Shown: piece after piece, positions 4,115-46,554 of the stretch | How positions within the stretch are numbered: the stretch's first letter is position 1 | Layout: each line of letters opens with the position of its first letter | Origin: Octopus bimaculoides | Lineage: Eukaryota | Direction: 5' to 3' | NCBI RefSeq assembly: GCF_001194135.2 | Contig: NC_068995.1 | Span: 57,638,788 to 57,689,625 of the forward strand | DNA: 50,838 nt | Translations under genes and position numbers: made by a program | The notes under the pieces: model-generated | Told to the model about the DNA's origin: nothing | Database searches by the model: none | What the model saw: the letters and a program-made list of their open reading frames with translations, nothing else

Positions 4115-6081
4115 NNNNNNNNNNNNNNNNNNNNNNNNNNNNNNNNNNNNNNNNNNNNNNNNNNNNNNNNNNNNNNNNNNNNNNNNNNNNNNNNNNNNNN
4201 NNNNNNNNNNNNNNNNNNNNNNNNNNNNNNNNNNNNNNNNNNNNNNNNNNNNNNNNNNNNNNNNNNNNNNNNNNNNNNNNNNNNNNNNNNNNNNNNNNNN
4301 NNNNNNNNNNNNNNNNNNNNNNNNNNNNNNNNNNNNNNNNNNNNNNNNNNNNNNNNNNNNNNNNNNNNNNNNNNNNNNNNNNNNNNNNNNNNNNNNNNNN
4401 NNNNNNNNNNNNNNNNNNNNNNNNNNNNNNNNNNNNNNNNNNNNNNNNNNNNNNNNNNNNNNNNNNNNNNNNNNNNNNNNNNNNNNNNNNNNNNNNNNNN
4501 NNNNNNNNNNNNNNNNAGACCAAAGAAGGTGCACACACATTATGATGAAGAAAACGTATAAAATAGAAACGTCAAAATGTTGGGTTTTTTTACGTACATA
4601 AATTTTGAGAAATTAAAACAAGTCTAACTTTTTAACACAAGAGGAGAATGATTTGGTTCTGTGTTTATATGGGTGAAATCCACAGACTGTTTTTGTATCA
4701 TAATTCAACTGAAATAATACTGGAATATGTATTCTTAACGTGAGTTTGACATGTGTAATTTATATAAACATATATATATGTATCATATAACAGAAGTGAG
4801 AGGGTTGGAAGGGGACACGCGTGTATGTGTGTGTCTGTTTGTTTCCCCACTACCGCTTGACAACCGCTGTTGGCGCGTTTGCGTCCCAGTATATAACTGA
4901 AACAAGTAAAATTAAACGATAATTAAGCCACAGATATACAGACGATGAAAAGATCGGTCGGCCACCGACAAAATGGCAGCTGTGGTGCGCATGACTGAAA
5001 CGACCGACAGTGGAAACGGATGGTAAGCCTGGCCATCGCAGATTTAGCAGACACATCCACTACGACTTCTTGTGGCAATGTCATTACGTATTTACATACG
5101 TATATAAATGTGTGTGTGTGTGTGTGTGTGTGATTGGTACTGTTTTAGTTATTTTAATCCTTGGGAGCCGGTCAGTGTTTGTTAGAGTCATCCGTTGTTT
5201 GCTTGTCAGTCTGATTGAGTTGATAGGATTATAAAACATGCATACGCAAACAAACACACTGCCACACATAAATACACACACCGACACACATACACATATA
5301 CACATATACATAATATATATATATANNNNNNNNNNNNNNNNNNNNNNNNNNNNNNNNNNNNNNNNNNNNNNNNNNNNNNNNNNNNNNNNNNNNNNNNNNN
5401 NNNNNNNNNNNNNNNNNNNNNNNNNNNNNNNNNNNNNNNNNNNNNNNNNNNNNNNNNNNNNNNNNNNNNNNNNNNNNNNNNNNNNNNNNNNNNNNNNNNN
5501 NNNNNNNNNNNNNNNNNNNNNNNNNNNNNNNNNNNNNNNNNNNNNNNNNNNNNNNNNNNNNNNNNNNNNNNNNNNNNNNNNNNNNNNNNNNNNNNNNNNN
5601 NNNNNNNNNNNNNNNNNNNNNNNNNNNNNNNNNNNNNNNNNNNNNNNNNNNNNNNNNNNNNNNNNNNNNNNNNNNNNNNNNNNNNNNNNNNNNNNNNNNN
5701 NNNNNNNNNNNNNNNNNNNNNNNNNNNNNNNNNNNNNNNNNNNNNNNNNNNNNNNNNNNNNNNNNNNNNNNNNNNNNNNNNNNNNNNNNNNNNNNNNNNN
5801 NNNNNNNNNNNNNNNNNNNNNNNNNNNNNNNNNNNNNNNNNNNNNNNNNNNNNNNNNNNNNNNNNNNNNNNNNNNNNNNNNNNNNNNNNNNNNNNNNNNN
5901 NNNNNNNNNNNNNNNNNNNNNNNNNNNNNNNNNNNNNNNNNNNNNNNNNNNNNNNNNNNNNNNNNNNNNNNNNNNNNNNNNNNNNNNNNNNNNNNNNNNN
6001 NNNNNNNNNNNNNNNNNNNNNNNNNNNNNNNNNNNNNATACATGTATATGTATGAATAAATATGATACATATATATATATA

Positions 6082-7073: not shown

Positions 7074-7260
7074 GGTGGTAAACAGGCAGAATCGTTGCCG
7101 CACCTAAAAAGTTGCTTAGCGGAATTTTGAGTTCAAACGCTGCTGGGATCGACTTTGTCTTTCATTGTTTTGGAATCGATAAAATAAATACCAGTTGATG
7201 TAATCGACTTATCCCTCCTCCAAACTTGCTGGCCTTGTGCCAAGACTTGAAACCAGTTAT
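7074..7260 (+). mobile_element. SINE family A
   Basis: GGCAGAATCGTT...TGAGTTCAAA...GACTTTGTCTTTCATTGTTTTGGAATCGATAAAATAAATACCAG...GCTGGCCTTGTGCCAAGACTTGAAACC. Confidence 0.85.
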
Positions 7261-7751: not shown

Positions 7752-7900
7752 GTTGGTTCTGAGTTCAAATATCGCCAATGTCGGCTTTGTCTTTCATCCT
7801 TTCTGAGTCGATAAAAAAAAGGACCAGTTGAGCACTGGTATCAATGTAATCAACTCCCCTAAGACTATATGACCCTCTGCTAAAATTTGAAGTTATTATT
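7752..7900 (+). mobile_element. SINE family A, 5'-truncated
   Basis: GTTCTGAGTTCAAAT...CTTTCATCCTTTCTGAGTCGATAAAA...ACCAGTTGAGCACTGG. Confidence 0.8.
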
Positions 7901-8750: not shown

Positions 8751-9191
8751 GTGTGTGTGTGTGTGTGTGTACGCAATATACAATTATTAACCCGAATTTC
8801 TTTTTGTGACTGTTTAAAGTAACGAACCACACCCAAATGTTTGGCCGAATGTTTTTTCATGAGAAATACCTTCATGTTAAGTGCTTCTCACAAATCGATT
8901 TTGCCGACCGGTTGACAGATGGTCAACTTATAGCAGAGGACTGTAGAATAACATATGAAAAGCTTTATTCTTCTGTATTCACGCATGAAAGAAAGAAAAA
9001 AACAAACTCAAATTAGTAATCAATTTATTGAGTCATAATAAATACATTACTGCGTACTAACTTAACACTGAGATCTTTAAGTTGCATTTACTTGTTCTAA
9101 AGAAGATTTTACATATGTTTGAGCGTGTGTACACACGCACACACATAAATGCATGTGTATAGATATATGTATGCAATGCATGTGTACATGT

Positions 9192-9382
9192 GTTTGATCC
9201 AAACTCGGTTAGCAACTGGTGTTGGTTTGTTTATATCCGTCTTTTGGCGAAAGAGACCGAGAGTTGAAGTATCGGATTTAAAAATAAGTATTGGAGTCGA
9301 TCTGTTCGATTAAATCTCTAAAGGCGATGCCCCAACATGGCCGCAGTCCAATAATTAAAAGGAAAGGTAAAATATAAAAGAT
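9192..9382 (+). mobile_element. SINE 3' module (tail T), decayed
   Basis: GCAACTGGTGTTGGTTTGTTTA...GAAAGAGACCGA...AATAAGTATTGGAGTCGATCTGTTCGATTAAA...GGCGATGCCCCAACATGGCCGCAGTCCAAT. Confidence 0.75.
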
Positions 9383-9412
9383 GTGTGTGTGTGTCTGTGT
9401 GTCTGCGTGGAT

Positions 9413-9693: not shown

Positions 9694-9880
9694 GGCGACG
9701 AGCGGGCAGAGACGATAGCACTCCGGTCAAAATGCTTAGCGATATTTCGTTCGTCTTTACGTTCTGATTTTATATTCCACCGAGTTCGACTTTTTCCTAT
9801 CATCCTTCCAGGGTTGATAAAATAAGCACCACTCAAGTACTGGGGTCGATGTAATCGACTTATCCCCTCCCCTCAAAAAC
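9694..9880 (+). mobile_element. SINE family A
   Basis: GGCGACGAGCGGGCAGAGACGATAGC...TCATCCTTCCAGGGTTGATAAAATAAGCACC...TACTGGGGTCGATGTAATCGACTTATCCCCTCCCC. Confidence 0.85.
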
Positions 9881-27889: not shown

Positions 27890-27905
27890 TAAGGATTGAT
27901 GATGG

Positions 27906-27936
<31 letters not shown>

Positions 27937-28020
27937 GAGGAGAAGGAGGAGGAGGAGGATAAATATCGTCGTCGTCGTCATCGTCATCGTCATCATCATC
28001 ATCATTATCATCACCATTAT
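27890..28020. repeat. Compound (GAT)n-(GAG)n-(CGT)n-(CAT)n triplet repeat
   Basis: Read directly. Confidence 0.9.
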
Positions 28021-30851: not shown

Positions 30852-31235
30852 AGCGACGAGCTGGTAGAATCGTTAGCACGTCGGGGGAAAATGGTTGGCC
30901 GCATGTCCTGAGTTCAAATTTCCCCGAAGTCGACTTTGCCCTTCATCGTTTCGGGGTCGATAAAATAAGTACCAGCTGAGCACTGGGATCAATATAACCA
31001 CGTGTGTGTGACTCTGTGTCTGTATTTGTAGCCTCGCCACCGTTTGATAACCGGTGCTGATGTGCTTACGTTCCCGTAACTTAGCGGTTTGAGAAAAAAA
31101 GAGACCGATAGAATAAGTACCAGGCTTTTAAAAAATAAGTACTGTGGTCAATGCGTTCGACTAAAAATTCTTCAAGGCGGTGCTGCCCCAGCATGGCCGC
31201 AGTCTAACGACTGAAACAAGTAAAAGTTAAAAGAT
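30852..31235 (+). mobile_element. Composite SINE: family A head and central domain, (GT)-rich linker, tail T
   Basis: GCGACGAGCTGGTAGAATCGTTAGC...CTTCATCGTTTCGGGGTCGATAAAATAAGTACCAG, linker, then GATAACCGGTGCTG...CCCGTAACTTAGCGG...GAGACCGATAGAATAAGTACCAGG...CAAGGCGGTGCTGCCCCAGCATGGCCGCAGTCTAACGACTGAAACAAGTAAAAG. Confidence 0.85.
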
Positions 31236-31989
31236 ATATTGCGTACCACATTTCCTTTCACGTCCACCCCACCCACCCCTGTTCGATGTGGCGACTTTGG
31301 TTGCCACATTGAAGTTCTTCGAGTGTAGGAATATATGTATGTGTGTGTTTGTGAAGTAGAAGAAAAAGAAGCGAGAAAAAACGAGGAAGAGGAGGCAGAA
31401 GAGGGTTAAAAAGAAGGGAGTAGAAGAGGAGGGAGAGGAGGAAAAGAAGAAAAGTAGAAGAAAAAAGACAAGGGAGAAGAAGGAGGAGTCTTGCCATTAA
31501 AGACATCGACATCACCGTCAAAGAGATAACTTTGGCAACAGCATGTTTTAGATAAAGTTCCAACTCTGCCAGGAAGCGCGATTCTGCGCCCCTGTACAAG
31601 CAAACTCCTCCACAGTTTTAAACAAACAATCAACAAAGTTGGCCACTTGAATACACAGTCTACTCTGAGTGACAGTCGATCAATCACTCACTCACTCATC
31701 CGTCACTATTTCCAATACTTTTATTTGCCAATCGCTATTTGTATTTGTGACAAATAAATAATAGGTCTCCGTGTCTTTGTAGAGTTTAGTGTTTATTTAT
31801 GAATAAAAAAAAAAAAAAAATGAAACGACAAAAAGTCAAGGTTATGCTGGAATACCTACGTCGGATGTTACGTCGTATTTGGAAACATGTCTGCTTTTCT
31901 GTCTACCACTCTTTTTCGTCTCTATGTTGGGGCCCTCCTCCGACATCTCACTCTCTCCTTCTCTTTTCCTCCATATATGGGTATGTCTG

Positions 31990-32937: not shown

Positions 32938-32968
<31 letters not shown>

Positions 32969-32980
32969 ATATGTTTGTGT

Positions 32981-33180
32981 GTTTGTCCCCCTCAACATCG
33001 CTTGACAACCGATGCTGGTGTGTTTACGTCCCCGTAACTTAGCGGTTCGGCAAAAGAGCCCGATAGAATAAGTACTAGGCTTCCAAAGAATAAGCCCTGA
33101 GGTCGATTTGCTCGACTAAAGGCGGTGCTCCAGCATGGCCACAGTCAAATGACTGAAACAGGTAAATGAGTAAATGAGTA
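32981..33180 (+). mobile_element. SINE tail T (well preserved; 5' part probably in the gap)
   Basis: GTTTGTCCCCCTCAACATCGCTTGACAACCGATGCTGGTGTGTTTACGTCCCCGTAACTTAGCGGTTCGGCAAAAGAG...GGCGGTGCTCCAGCATGGCCACAGTCAAATGACTGAAACAGG. Confidence 0.9.
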
Positions 33181-34045
33181 TATATATATAGAGAGAGAGA
33201 TAGATAGATAGATAGATAGATAGACATAGCGATAGATTGATATATAGAAAACTAATTAGACAGATTCGCGCATACACACACGTACACTTATATACATACA
33301 CACACAAACACGTACACACACACATACACCACATAATTCTCTGTATATTTCATCATACCTCCGAATCTTCTGCATCTCCCCACCTGCATCACAAATAACA
33401 TAAGTTACCCCAGCCACCCACCCACCTAACCATCCATCCAAACCATCAACCAACCAACCAACCAGCCAACCAGCAAAGAAACAATATCACTATCGCCTAC
33501 ACACACACACACACACGCAACGGTATCATTAACCTCCAGTGGTAGCCTATCATAAAACAAACGTGCCTTTCAATATGGCGCCAGAACGTGTTGTTCGTAA
33601 GCTGTTGACGTGGCTGGGAGTGGTGTTGGTGTACACGGTTGGTGACGACAGATCAATGACATCAGGGTAGCGGTAGGTAAGAGGATATCCGGATGGCATG
33701 AACAGATCTGGCACCAGATGGTGTCTTTCTATCAGTTTCATTTCGGCATAACATCCTCGACATTTCAACCGCTAGCACCGCTACTACCACATCCAATACC
33801 ACCACCAGCACCACCACCACCACCACCACCGNNNNNNNNNNNNNNNNNNNNNNNNNNNNNNNNNNNNNNNNNNNNNNNNNNNNNNNNNNNNNNNNNNNNN
33901 NNNNNNNNNNNNNNNNNNNNNGCCACTCTCAATGCATCCAAGATTACTACTACGGCGACGACGACGACGACGACAGCCGACGAAAGCCAAAACATCTGAC
34001 TCCGAAACTCAATCACTATTTCTTTCTTTCTTCGCACACATATAC

Positions 34046-35428: not shown

Positions 35429-35718
35429 TATTCTTAACCATGCAGACACGCCAGGGCCTATTTTAGGAGCCCTTTTTNNNNNNNNNNNNNNNNNNNNNNN
35501 NNNNNNNNNNNNNNNNNNNNNNNNNNNNNNNNNNNNNNNNNTTTGTATTTATCCAATCAGAAAAATATGTAAGTTTGAAGCCAAAAAAGGCAAAGACTTG
35601 AAACTACTATTTCAGAATTTCAGAATGCCGTAGACTTAAGGAATAATCTTTATTATATTTTAGTTGTGCCGAACCGTTAATTTACAGGTGGAGTGGAGGC
35701 GTATATACATGGGGACGT

Positions 35719-35822
35719 ATGTTGAAAGCACCGGTTTTTGTCCGATCACCGAGGGTTAAGCAACATCGAACCAAGTTAATACTTTGCTGGGCGACCGCTT
35801 GGGAAACATAAGTGCTGCAAGC
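35719..35822 (+). pseudogene. 5S rRNA-derived sequence (approx. nt 16-118 of 5S), decayed
   Basis: ATGTTGAAAGCACCGGTTTTTGTCCGATCACCGAGGGTTAAGCAACATCGAACCAAGTTAATACTTTGCTGGGCGACCGCTTGGGAAACATAAGTGCTGCAAGC aligns co-linearly by eye to invertebrate 5S (ACGTTGAAAGCACCGGTTCTCGTCCGATCACCGAAGTTAAGCAACGTCGAGCC..GTTAGTACTTGGATGGGTGACCGCCTGGGAATACC.GGTGCTGTAAGC). Box A and box C recognisable but mutated. Confidence 0.9.
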
Positions 35823-35831
35823 GTCTCACTT

Positions 35832-35901
35832 TTCAACCCGGTGTCCCAGCATGGCCGCATCCAATGACTGAAACAAATAAACGATTAAAGATAAAAGATA
35901 A
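35832..35901 (+). mobile_element. Terminal 70 nt of SINE tail T, fused to the 5S copy
   Basis: TTCAACCCGGTGTCCCAGCATGGCCGCATCCAATGACTGAAACAAATAAACGATTAAAGATAAAAGATAA versus 31170-31235 TTCAAGGCGGTGCTGCCCCAGCATGGCCGCAGTCTAACGACTGAAACAAGTAAAAG. Confidence 0.85.
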
Positions 35902-36635
35902 ATGAATTTGTGTATCTATGTTTGTATGAGTGGGCACATATATACGTAAACTCATGTGTGTATGTGTGTACGCGTATGCGAGCGTAAGTGCGGATGTGTG
36001 TTAGCGTAAGTGTATACAAATGGACACGTCAAATGTACCAAGCACTTTGTATATTCGCTTCACATGTGTTGTGCAGAACAAAACTAACAGTCCAACAGAG
36101 ATAATGCTGTTGCTATAGTTACCGAAACAAACAATAACATCATCCTCCTGATATTTGAGCCTCTATTGTTGTGTCAACTTGACGCTTGTTTCGTATCTAA
36201 GGCACATCATGCTTCCACGTCCGCTTCAGCTATTGTATGACGGAATATCGTATGCACAAGTGTTCTGACTAGAAGCTTTTGTCAAGTCTTACTCAAGCGA
36301 GAGATTTGAGTTTTCTATTGTGACGAAGTTGCACTCAAGTTTCATTGCCTTCGAAATTTTTTCTTTCTTTTTATAGTTTTAATGTATTTTTGTTATATAT
36401 GTACATATTTCTTTTTCATTGTTTTTGTATATTACAAAAAGAAAAAGAAAAAGAAACTGATGTACGCAAAAAATAACAGTAACATACACACAAAAGAAAA
36501 AGCGAACACCTACAACTGTGTAAAAGGTAGACAGGAAAAAAAGTAGATGAATACATTTGATGTGGAAGAGGTGGGTGGCAGCCAATGTTTGCAAATTGTT
36601 TTGTGTAAAATATGTTGATGATAGTAACATTACCA

Positions 36636-36805: not shown

Positions 36806-37240
36806 TGGCTGCGTGGTTAAGAAATTCGCTTTGTAACCTTCGGAACCTTGAGCAACTGACTTTTGCTAAAAAGACACAGAACCACAAATGCCTCCAGAGT
36901 AAATTTGGTAGGCAAAAACACTGTGTGCAAGTCCGACGTATACATACATGCATACATACATGAATGCATATATATATATATANNNNNNNNNNNNNNNNNN
37001 NNNNNNNNNNNNNNNNNNNNNNNNNNNNNNNNNNNNNNNNNNNNNNNNNNNNNNNNNNNNNNNNNNNNNNNNNNNNNNNNNNNNNNNNNNNNNNNNNNNN
37101 NNNNNNNNNNNNNNNNNNNNNNNNNNNNNNNNNNNNNNNNNNNNNNNNNNNNNNNNNNNNNNNNNNNNNNNNNNNNNNTCGATTAAAATTCTTCAAAACG
37201 GTGCTCCAGTATGAGCACAGTCTAAAGTAAAATATAAAAA
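36806..37240 (+). mobile_element. SINE family B head ... gap ... tail T (probably one element)
   Basis: TGGCTGCGTGGTTAAGAAATTCGC...CCTTGAGCAA...GAGTAAATTTGGTAGGCAAAAACAC...CGACGTATA before the gap; TCGATTAAAATTCTTCAAAACGGTGCTCCAGTATG after it. Confidence 0.6.
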
Positions 37241-46005: not shown

Positions 46006-46009
46006 CGCT

Positions 46010-46125
46010 GGTTCGGCAAAGAGAGATCGATGAAATAACTGCCACACTTTATATGAGTTGAGTCAAGAATTGGAGTCGGTATTTTCGACTTAATCTTTCA
46101 ATGCGTTGCTCCAGCATGGCGTAGG
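46010..46125 (+). mobile_element. SINE tail T fragment
   Basis: GGTTCGGCAAAGAGAGATCGATGAAATA...GGAGTCGGT...CGACTTAATC...GTTGCTCCAGCATGGC. Confidence 0.6.
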
Positions 46126-46554
46126 GACGATTACTAATACGAGTAAAAAATGTGTGCGTGTGTCTTTGTGTGTATGTGTGTGTACACACACACACATACA
46201 CTGGGAGAAAGAGACATGTGTATGAACTTGTCTGTATAAATATAAATATTTATATGTGTATGTGTGTGTACGCACGCATGAACATGTATACATATCTACA
46301 TATATATCTGTGCATATGTATATAAGCTTGAATGCATTTATCTACATATATACGTAAGTATTCATGCGCACTTTTATTTGTTTCATTCGTATACAAGATG
46401 GCGGCGGAAAATAATAACAGAAAATTCGTGAGGGTGGAAGGAGCGATTTTTGTCTAACGTTCTTTTCTTTTACTTATGTATTCTTTATTTCTATATTTTT
46501 ACCGTTTTATTTTCATTCATTGTTTTTTTTCCTATTCATTTTCCTTTCTCTTCT

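What the first reader, a model, noticed from the sequence alone, without database searches (positions are those of the whole stretch)
35665..35901. 5S rRNA-headed SINE-tail chimera (candidate SINE3-like element)
A near-complete decayed 5S sequence (35719-35822, internal type-1 Pol III promoter region included) is followed within about 9 nt by the last 70 nt of SINE tail T in the same orientation, ending in AAAGAT-type repeats. That is the architecture of a 5S-derived SINE (SINE3, known from fish and a few other groups; I know of none described for cephalopods) or of a template-switch chimeric retrocopy like U6-L1. Immediately upstream, an inverted piece of the same tail family (TGCCGAACCGTTAATTTACAG...GGGGACGT, 35666-35718) replaces the first 15 nt of 5S, reminiscent of a twin-priming or inversion junction.
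Basis: partly seen in the sequence, partly recalled or inferred. Interest (0 to 1): 0.75.

Follow-up and report, generated by a model that had tools for sequence, protein, structure and literature searches.

The report
5S rRNA fused to SINE tail
A decayed copy of 5S ribosomal RNA is joined head-to-tail to the 3' end of the common octopus SINE, which is the design of a 5S-headed SINE or of a one-off reverse-transcriptase template switch; this is a known kind of element, and its copy number in the genome could not be checked here.

Summary
Rfam finds one 5S rRNA match in the window (35707-35823, + strand, 48.8 bits, cut-off 38). A profile of the resident octopus tRNA-type SINE matches the same strand just downstream (35797-35897, E 5e-13), ending in A-rich 7-mer repeats. 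The join is not sharp: 35806-35829 fits both 5S and SINE body. The first 15-19 nt of 5S are not recognisable, and no target-site duplication was found. The "inverted SINE piece" upstream reduces to one 24-nt block (35665-35688, local E 0.006), which is marginal.

The window is octopod: the same SINE occurs in Octopus sinensis and O. bimaculoides loci.

The deciding question is whether this is a dispersed family or a single chimera. I could not test it. The other roughly 110 kb of octopod DNA I could read (rest of the window plus 63 kb) holds no second 5S-like sequence.

My estimate: a dead copy of a SINE3-type family about 0.5, a one-off template-switch chimera about 0.35, chance or artefact about 0.1.

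The kind is known. HaSE3/HaSE1 in moths has the same design, and about 24,000 5S-derived loci are reported in giant squid. Modest interest.

The parts
35665..35688 (-). 24-nt block resembling the body of the resident SINE (profile positions 70-93), in antisense orientation. Probably a fragment of an older SINE copy in the flank; membership in the element is doubtful.
   Evidence: nhmmer local E 0.006. 7 of 2000 genomic controls score as well as the 35645-35718 piece that contains it. Whole-window E is only 0.81. BLAST to 33055-33031 is 84% over 25 nt, E 0.05.
35689..35719 (.). 31 nt with no convincing match to 5S or SINE. It sits where 5S positions 1-19 should be and contains GGGGACGTA, the reverse complement of the SINE 9-mer TACGTCCCC.
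   Evidence: Sequence. cmscan aligns 35707-35719 to model positions 1-13 with few matches and broken helix I pairs. The SINE profile needs a 25-nt insertion to bridge it.
35720..35805 (+). Unambiguous 5S rRNA-derived segment (about 5S positions 17-101). It covers the type-1 internal control region: box A about 35754-35768, intermediate element about 35771-35776, box C about 35784-35801. Several former CpG sites now read TpG or CpA.
   Evidence: Rfam RF00001, 48.8 bits, E 3e-7. The box coordinates are transferred from the Xenopus/human numbering, which is my own knowledge.
35806..35829 (+). Ambiguous junction zone, ACATAAGTGCTGCAAGCGTCTCAC. GTGCTGCAAGC fits the 5S 3' end (GTGCTGTAGGC). ACATAAGTGCTG fits the SINE body motif AATAAGTACTG. 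TCTCAC is filler or SINE body with deletions.
   Evidence: cmscan aligns it to model positions 102-120. nhmmer aligns the same bases to SINE profile positions 127-158 with two 5-nt gaps at posterior 0.5-0.9. The human 5S alignment shows a 6-nt mismatch patch here.
35830..35833 (+). Run of four T between head and tail. In many eukaryotes this is a Pol III termination signal. Other SINE copies have TTC or TTT at this place.
   Evidence: Sequence. Alignments A1 and A2.
35830..35906 (+). 3' module shared with the resident octopus tRNA-type SINE: conserved CCCAGCATGGCCGCA, a short hairpin CAGTC-NAAT-GACTG (here CA-TCCAATGACTG at 35858-35870, with one stem base deleted), then A-rich 7-mer repeats (35876-35906).
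   Evidence: BLAST 83-93% identity to four copies. nhmmer E 5.4e-13. The hairpin pairs are kept in 8-9 of 10 copies, but with weak energy and almost no covariation.

Best explanation
This is a dead retrocopy with the architecture of a 5S-headed (SINE3-type) SINE. A 5S rRNA-derived head carries the type-1 internal promoter region. It is fused in sense to the 3' recognition module of the abundant octopus tRNA-type SINE.

Proposed origin. The reverse transcriptase of the partner LINE primed at the target nick on the tail of a SINE (or LINE) RNA. It copied about 70-100 nt, then switched template to 5S rRNA. A fusion of this kind that stays transcribable by Pol III and keeps the tail can be copied again by the same LINE.

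I think it somewhat more likely (about 0.5) that this locus is one decayed copy of a family that amplified from such a fusion than that the switch happened at this very insertion (about 0.35, first rival).

Shown: 5S homology, tail homology, shared strand, and adjacency far tighter than chance. Inferred: the template switch, the LINE partner, and above all amplification. This copy is not a source gene. Its 5' end, helix I and promoter boxes are mutated, and a T4 run lies between head and tail.
For: The architecture is verified. Ordinary copies of the SINE give no 5S signal on either strand at E<=10, so the 5S part is a real addition and not a property of the SINE body.

Chance adjacency is about 0.3%.

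There are direct precedents for 5S-headed and tRNA-headed SINEs sharing one 3' part. HaSE3 and HaSE1 in Helicoverpa are explained by template switching from SINE RNA to 5S rRNA. CoeSINE5 and CoeSINE4 are a second pair. SINE3 families are said to have arisen many times. Lepidopteran SINE3 heads are also diverged upstream of the promoter boxes, so an unrecognisable 5' end need not mean truncation.

Precedent in cephalopods: about 24,000 5S-derived loci in giant squid, 'likely SINEs'.

Sampling argument (inference). One-off 5S chimeras are rare where they have been counted: about 10.5% of 253 in the human genome, mostly antisense and truncated. That is roughly one per 100 Mb. Meeting a sense, near-complete one in a 46-kb window is then a few-in-10,000 event, unless such elements are numerous in this genome.
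Against: No second copy is available. There is no other 5S-like sequence in the rest of the window or in 63 kb of O. sinensis and O. bimaculoides DNA, which hold 3 copies of the tRNA-type SINE. This only excludes densities near 1 per 25 kb.

Other points against:
- A T4 run lies between head and tail.
- The first 15-19 nt of 5S are missing or replaced.
- No target-site duplication was found.
- The promoter boxes are mutated.
- No paper I could search describes a 5S SINE in octopus.
- The sampling argument fails if the window was chosen because of this element, or if octopus LINEs switch templates far more often than human L1.
Confidence: 0.5

Rival explanations
1. One-off chimeric retrocopy. 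In this single insertion event the LINE reverse transcriptase copied the tail of a SINE or LINE RNA and jumped to a 5S rRNA molecule, as in human U6/L1 and 5S/L1 chimeras. The product never amplified.
For: It has the same verified anatomy. Chimeras of 5S with LINE 3' ends are documented and do not propagate. The T4 run and mutated promoter would not matter for a dead-on-arrival product. No second copy was seen in about 110 kb. Retroposed 5S promoters are expected to be weak without their upstream signals.
Against: Such events are very rare per genome where counted, and in human they are mostly antisense and truncated at 5S positions 46 or 90. Here the 5S part is sense and spans about positions 17 to 101-120. 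No flanking duplication was found, although that weighs equally against the family reading.
Confidence: 0.35
2. Chance juxtaposition of two independent events. A 5S pseudogene (retroposed or a DNA-level orphon) happens to lie next to an independently inserted, 5'-truncated copy of the SINE.
For: SINE copies and fragments are dense here, with 11 significant profile hits in 46 kb, several of them 5'-truncated. The junction zone is untidy. No single duplication brackets the whole.
Against: The expected frequency of a same-strand SINE 3' fragment starting within 30 nt of the 5S end is about 0.3%. A LINE that recognises a specific tail gives a 5S RNA no other route into the genome than such a fusion (inference). 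There is no 5S rDNA spacer or second 5S unit nearby.
Confidence: 0.07
3. Assembly artefact. The draft assembly joined reads from a 5S pseudogene and from a SINE copy elsewhere, or the right flank beyond the high-copy tail belongs to another locus.
For: The window is a gap-rich draft, with 18 N runs covering 9.5% of bases, one of them 125 nt upstream of the reported start of the finding (35665). A wrong exit from a high-copy repeat would explain the missing duplication.
Against: The tail is only about 70 nt, short enough for single reads to span from the 5S part to the right flank. There is no N run between 35542 and 36982.
Confidence: 0.04
4. Side claim, not exclusive of the above. The upstream antisense SINE-like block (35665-35688) was made in the same event by twin priming or inversion.
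For: The block corresponds to SINE positions 70-93, upstream of the part present in sense, which is the order twin priming would give. Antisense small-RNA pieces in LINE chimeras have been ascribed to twin priming.
Against: It is only 24 nt at local E 0.006, plus a 9-mer, and it needs a 25-nt unexplained insert. A 5S segment lying between the two SINE parts is not what simple twin priming yields. SINE fragments are common enough here for a pre-existing one to sit in the flank.
Confidence: 0.15

Closest known systems
HaSE3 / HaSE1 of Helicoverpa armigera (5S-headed and tRNA-headed SINEs sharing body and tail; PMC3272025)
   Same: A 5S-derived head replaces the tRNA head of a resident SINE while the 3' part is shared. 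The proposed origin is template switching from SINE RNA to 5S rRNA. HaSE3 is much rarer than its tRNA-headed sibling, and some copies lack target-site duplications.
   Different: HaSE3 is a demonstrated multi-copy family with a consensus, an identified RTE partner and conserved promoter boxes. Here there is one decayed copy, an unidentified partner, a shorter shared part (about 70-100 nt) and a different phylum.
SINE3 of zebrafish and other 5S-headed SINEs (Kapitonov & Jurka 2003; CoeSINE5, SINE-1_Pmo, lepidopteran SINE3)
   Same: A 5S-derived head with box A, intermediate element and box C, followed by a LINE-type tail that ends in short repeats. In several families the region upstream of the boxes is diverged from 5S.
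   Different: Those are families defined by many copies. Zebrafish SINE3 carries a Deu-type body. No such body is evident here, where the head runs almost directly into the tail.
Human U6/L1 and 5S/L1 chimeric retrocopies (Buzdin et al.; PMC11838501)
   Same: A small Pol III RNA fused 5' to the 3' end of a retroelement, made in one target-primed reverse transcription event with a template switch.
   Different: In human the 5S pieces are mostly antisense and cut at positions 46 or 90. The tail is L1 with poly(A), and 6 of 8 checked loci show duplications. Here the 5S is sense and nearly complete, the tail is a specific non-poly(A) module, and no duplication was found.
5S-derived loci of the giant squid Architeuthis dux (PMC6962438)
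   Same: A cephalopod genome with very many dispersed 5S-derived sequences, interpreted as SINEs.
   Different: These were only counted with Rfam. No structure, tail or consensus is given. Squid and octopus lineages split long ago (about 220 Ma), and the tail here belongs to an octopod SINE.

Membership tests
SINE3 (5S rRNA-headed SINE) | 5' part derived from 5S rRNA, including the internal type-1 promoter region (box A, IE, box C) | tested here: met
   RF00001 at 48.8 bits against a cut-off of 38. Homology covers about positions 17-101 and includes all three boxes.
SINE3 (5S rRNA-headed SINE) | 3' tail shared with a partner LINE (or with other SINEs that use it), in the same orientation, ending in short repeats or an A-rich run | tested here: met
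   The tail is shared with the resident tRNA-type SINE, E 5.4e-13 on the same strand, with terminal 7-mer repeats. The LINE itself was not found, and no LINE 3' end with this tail occurs in the DNA available.
SINE3 (5S rRNA-headed SINE) | Many dispersed copies sharing the same head-tail junction, each in its own flanks | not testable with these tools
The metagenome, viral and prokaryote collections hold no octopus DNA. Protein-based routes found nothing. In the remaining roughly 46 kb of the window plus 63 kb of other octopod DNA there was no second 5S-like sequence.
SINE3 (5S rRNA-headed SINE) | Uninterrupted Pol III transcription unit (no T-run terminator between head and tail) | tested here: inconclusive
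   TTTT lies at 35830-35833. Sibling SINE copies read TTC or TTT there, so it may be a later mutation of this copy. Some tRNA-SINE copies themselves contain TTTT in the body.
SINE3 (5S rRNA-headed SINE) | Target-site duplications flanking the element | tested here: not met
   No direct repeat of 8 nt or more, and no near-match of 12-16 nt, between 35545-35725 and 35870-35990. The only exact shared word is the low-complexity 7-mer TATATAC, and it is not at the ends. Decay, a partner that makes short duplications, or a misassembled flank could each hide one.
Template-switch chimeric retrocopy (U6/L1 type) | Small RNA joined at its own 3' end to an internal point of the retroelement's 3' part | tested here: inconclusive
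   35806-35829 can be read as 5S positions 102-120 plus a 6-nt filler, or as SINE body with two deletions. An octopus 5S reference was not obtainable.
Template-switch chimeric retrocopy (U6/L1 type) | Unique junction (single event, no amplification) | not testable with these tools
   The same limits apply as for copy number above.
5S rDNA array or orphon | Tandem 5S units, or 5S flanked by its own spacer | tested here: not met
   There is a single 5S hit in 50.8 kb at both thresholds. The 3' side is SINE tail and the 5' end of the gene is missing.

The most novel reading that the evidence does not exclude
This locus is a copy of an undescribed 5S-headed SINE family of octopods, the first characterised SINE3 in molluscs. 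The family would have been born when the reverse transcriptase that copies the octopus-specific tRNA-type SINE switched to 5S rRNA, and it would have amplified through the same tail. That would give a natural pair of SINEs with type-1 and type-2 Pol III promoters competing for one LINE partner. It would also offer a likely explanation for the large counts of 5S-derived loci seen in cephalopod genomes.
Probability: 0.5. Interest if true: 0.4.

Novelty: new member of a known kind. Interest (0 to 1): 0.3.

Why it matters
If the junction is multi-copy, octopods join the patchy list of lineages in which 5S rRNA was recruited as a SINE head. The octopus SINE expansion would then have a second promoter class riding on the same tail. 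That is useful for repeat annotation, because such loci are otherwise counted as 5S genes or pseudogenes. It is also useful for asking why type-1 promoter SINEs stay rarer than tRNA-headed ones.

If it is a single chimera, it is a small but clear record that the octopus LINE machinery switches templates onto abundant small RNAs, which is the step from which new SINE families start.

Either way it does not change what is known about how such elements work.

Tried and rejected
I did not try to get round this.

Metagenome scan for the junction pattern: 11 hits. All are the same GC-rich bacterial coding gene, so they are irrelevant.

Viral and prokaryote collections: neither the junction nor the SINE tail alone is present, so these negatives say nothing.

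Exact look-up of five window ORFs, including the 34-aa ORF across the junction: none is on record.

Protein search with the 42-aa junction-spanning frame: no candidates.

Sampling more octopod DNA through annotated proteins: 42 kb of O. sinensis and 21 kb of O. bimaculoides hold three SINE copies and no 5S. This is too little DNA to decide.

Idea that the SINE body is itself antisense 5S, suggested by an nhmmer alignment across 35719-35746: rejected. Ordinary SINE copies give no 5S hit at E<=10 on either strand.

Idea that the 5S-tail unit was inserted into a complete antisense SINE: rejected. No antisense SINE remainder lies to the right of the tail.

Octopus 5S reference sequence: the 1983 paper and the 2015 octopus genome paper are not held.

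Target-site duplication search: negative.

Tail hairpin covariation: too weak to claim.

Full report
WHAT IS THERE

The window is a gap-rich draft: 18 N runs, 4838 N in total, 38.8% G+C.

Rfam at gathering thresholds finds a single family in all 50.8 kb. It is 5S rRNA at 35707-35823 on the + strand, 48.8 bits against a cut-off of 38, E 3e-7. A permissive scan adds only microsatellite-driven microRNA noise and no further 5S.

By plain alignment the 5S homology is solid from about 35720 to 35805. The matching stretch reads TGTTGAAAGCACCGGTTTTTGTCCGATCACCGAGGGTTAAGCAACATCGAACCAAGTTAATACTTTGCTGGGCGACCGCTTGGGAA. It covers the places of box A, the intermediate element and box C of the type-1 Pol III promoter. 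Several former CpG sites read TpG or CpA.

The first 15-19 nt of 5S are not recognisable. cmscan aligns 35707-35719 to model positions 1-13 with few matches, and most helix I pairs are flagged non-canonical.

THE TAIL

The window holds a dense family of tRNA-type SINEs. Each has a tRNA-like head, a (TG)n stretch, a body, and a tail ending CCAGCATGGCCGCAGTCTAATGACTGAAACAAGTAAAAGATAAAAGAT.

BLAST of the finding against the window matches 35839-35894 to four such tails at 83-93% identity. An HMM built from five copies (alignment A1) finds 11 significant hits in the window. One of them is 35797-35897 on the + strand, E 5.4e-13. Head and tail are therefore on the same strand and effectively contiguous.

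With 10 other SINE hits in 46 kb, a same-strand SINE fragment beginning within 30 nt of a given point is expected about 0.3% of the time. Adjacency by accident is unlikely.

Ordinary SINE copies give no 5S signal on either strand, even at E<=10. The 5S part is therefore a genuine extra component.

THE JUNCTION IS NOT CLEAN

Bases 35806-35829 (ACATAAGTGCTGCAAGCGTCTCAC) can be read in two ways.
- As the 5S 3' end: GTGCTGCAAGC against GTGCTGTAGGC, followed by a 6-nt filler.
- As SINE body: ACATAAGTGCTG against AATAAGTACTG, with two 5-nt deletions.

Without the octopus 5S gene, which I could not obtain, this stays open.

A run of four T lies at 35830-35833. Sibling copies read TTC or TTT there, so it may be a later mutation.

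The tail has a short hairpin, CAGTC-loop-GACTG, kept in 8-9 of 10 copies. Its energy is weak and there is almost no covariation. In this copy one stem base is deleted.

No target-site duplication was found.

THE UPSTREAM 'INVERTED PIECE'

Only one 24-nt block stands up, at 35665-35688 (SINE profile positions 70-93 in antisense). Its local E is 0.006. 7 of 2000 random genomic 74-mers score as well as the 35645-35718 piece that contains it. Its whole-window E is 0.81.

The profile alignment that also runs through 35719-35746 reflects a chance resemblance between the SINE body and antisense 5S.

SINE fragments are common here, so an older fragment in the flank is the simplest reading. Twin priming is possible but weakly based.

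WHOSE GENOME

A Tc1-type transposase remnant in the window (20941-21321) has an Octopus sinensis homologue. The O. sinensis locus around that homologue, and an O. bimaculoides locus reached through a LINE endonuclease fragment, both carry full copies of the same SINE. The window is octopod.

THE DECISIVE TEST COULD NOT BE RUN

- The metagenome scan for the junction returned only a bacterial coding gene.
- The viral and prokaryote collections hold neither the junction nor the SINE tail.
- Window ORFs are not on record.
- A protein search with the junction-spanning frame found nothing.
- The 63 kb of other octopod DNA I could fetch has three SINE copies and no 5S-like sequence, by Rfam or by nhmmer. 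This excludes only very high densities.

HOW IT MOST LIKELY CAME ABOUT

The anatomy is what target-primed reverse transcription with a template switch produces. The partner LINE's enzyme starts on the tail of a SINE or LINE RNA and continues on an abundant small RNA.

The same route is proposed for two kinds of element. One is one-off chimeras such as human U6/L1 and 5S/L1, which do not propagate. The other is the birth of 5S-headed SINEs that share their 3' part with a tRNA-headed sibling: HaSE3/HaSE1 in Helicoverpa and CoeSINE5/CoeSINE4 in coelacanth. SINE3 families are said to have arisen many times, and their heads are often diverged upstream of the promoter boxes.

This copy is dead in any case. 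Its 5' end and helix I are lost, its boxes are mutated, and T4 lies before the tail.

FAMILY OR SINGLE EVENT

I lean slightly to a family, at about 0.5 against 0.35, for two reasons.

First, cephalopod genomes can carry very many 5S-derived loci. The giant squid paper reports about 24,000, 'likely SINEs'.

Second, one-off 5S chimeras are rare where they have been counted. They make up about 10.5% of 253 chimeras in the human genome, and most are antisense and truncated. Meeting a sense, near-complete one in a given 46-kb window would be a few-in-10,000 event unless such elements are numerous. This second argument is inference. It fails if the window was picked for this element, or if the octopus enzyme switches templates much more often than L1.

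Against a family:
- no second copy in about 110 kb;
- the T4 run;
- no duplication;
- no report of a 5S SINE in octopus in the papers I could search.

Chance juxtaposition (about 0.07) and assembly misjoin (about 0.04) remain possible.

COMPARISON AND NOVELTY

The closest known relatives in design are HaSE3/HaSE1 and zebrafish SINE3. The closest in mechanism are the human small-RNA/L1 chimeras.

Membership in SINE3 is met for the 5S head and the shared tail. It is untested for copy number. It is not met for duplications, and it is inconclusive for an uninterrupted transcription unit.

Whatever the outcome, this is a new member of a known kind. If the family exists it would be the first described 5S-headed SINE of octopods, of moderate interest to transposon specialists and useful for repeat annotation. 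If not, it is an ordinary retrocopy chimera.

Noticed in passing
window 32962-33190(+), 31005-31244(+), 35000-34776(-), 9179-9395(+), 44615-44408(-), 30120-29995(-), 46007-46151(+), 4821-4892(+), 37179-37229(+), 9815-9863(+): Ten further copies or fragments of one tRNA-type SINE family, about one per 4.6 kb. Most are preceded by a (TG)n stretch. The same family occurs in O. sinensis (L013 6897-6683 and 9635-9411) and O. bimaculoides (L015 19546-19303). Neither ARAGORN nor Rfam recognises the tRNA-like head at 44750-44690(-).
   Followed up: partly
window 30900-30990, also 2004-2075, 7149-7198, 7756-7852, 9761-9854: A second repeated module (GAGTTCAAATTTCCCCGAAGTCGACTTTGCC...TCGATAAAATAAGTACCAG) sits directly upstream of the SINE copy at 31005 and recurs at least four times on its own. 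The motif TCGATA-AATAAGTACC-AG occurs three times along the composite, which suggests internal duplication or a dimeric SINE.
   Followed up: no
window 20941-21321 (+): A 126-aa ORF that is the N-terminal DNA-binding part of a Tc1/mariner transposase (Pfam HTH_Tnp_Tc3_2 on its homologues). It is 75% identical to Octopus sinensis LOC118762572 and 84% identical to an unnamed ENA protein. Close relatives are also annotated in the mantis shrimp Oratosquilla oratoria (73-74%), which hints at horizontal spread.
   Followed up: partly
window 27898-28003, both strands: A sub-threshold Rfam mir-598 hit (46.8 bits, cut-off 69) lies on a (GAT)n...(ATC)n inverted microsatellite, so it is a hairpin artefact. 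The giant squid paper lists mir-598 at 172 copies. Hits of this kind may inflate such counts. Dozens of mir-297, mir-466 and mir-3149 sub-threshold hits elsewhere in the window lie on TG/TA microsatellites.
   Followed up: partly
window 35478-35541 and 17 other N runs: 9.5% of the window is assembly gap. One gap lies 125 nt upstream of the reported start of the finding (35665) and removes whatever preceded the antisense SINE-like block. Many gaps are flanked by microsatellites or SINE copies.
   Followed up: no
L013 7140-7550 (-), = L014 about 22300-22700 (+): A LINE endonuclease (Exo_endo_phos) fragment in an intron of the O. sinensis Peptidase_S28 gene, 77% identical to an O. bimaculoides protein annotated 'craniofacial development protein 2-like'. 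It is cut by a 100-N gap and followed by a SINE copy. Whether this LINE carries the SINE's tail could not be seen.
   Followed up: partly
window 35720-35823: Decay within the 5S part looks uneven. There are about 3 changes in the first 34 nt against about 17 in the remaining 63, judged against protostome-type 5S recalled from memory. This could mean the source was already diverged in its 3' half, as in an evolved SINE head. It could equally mean that octopus 5S differs there.
   Followed up: no
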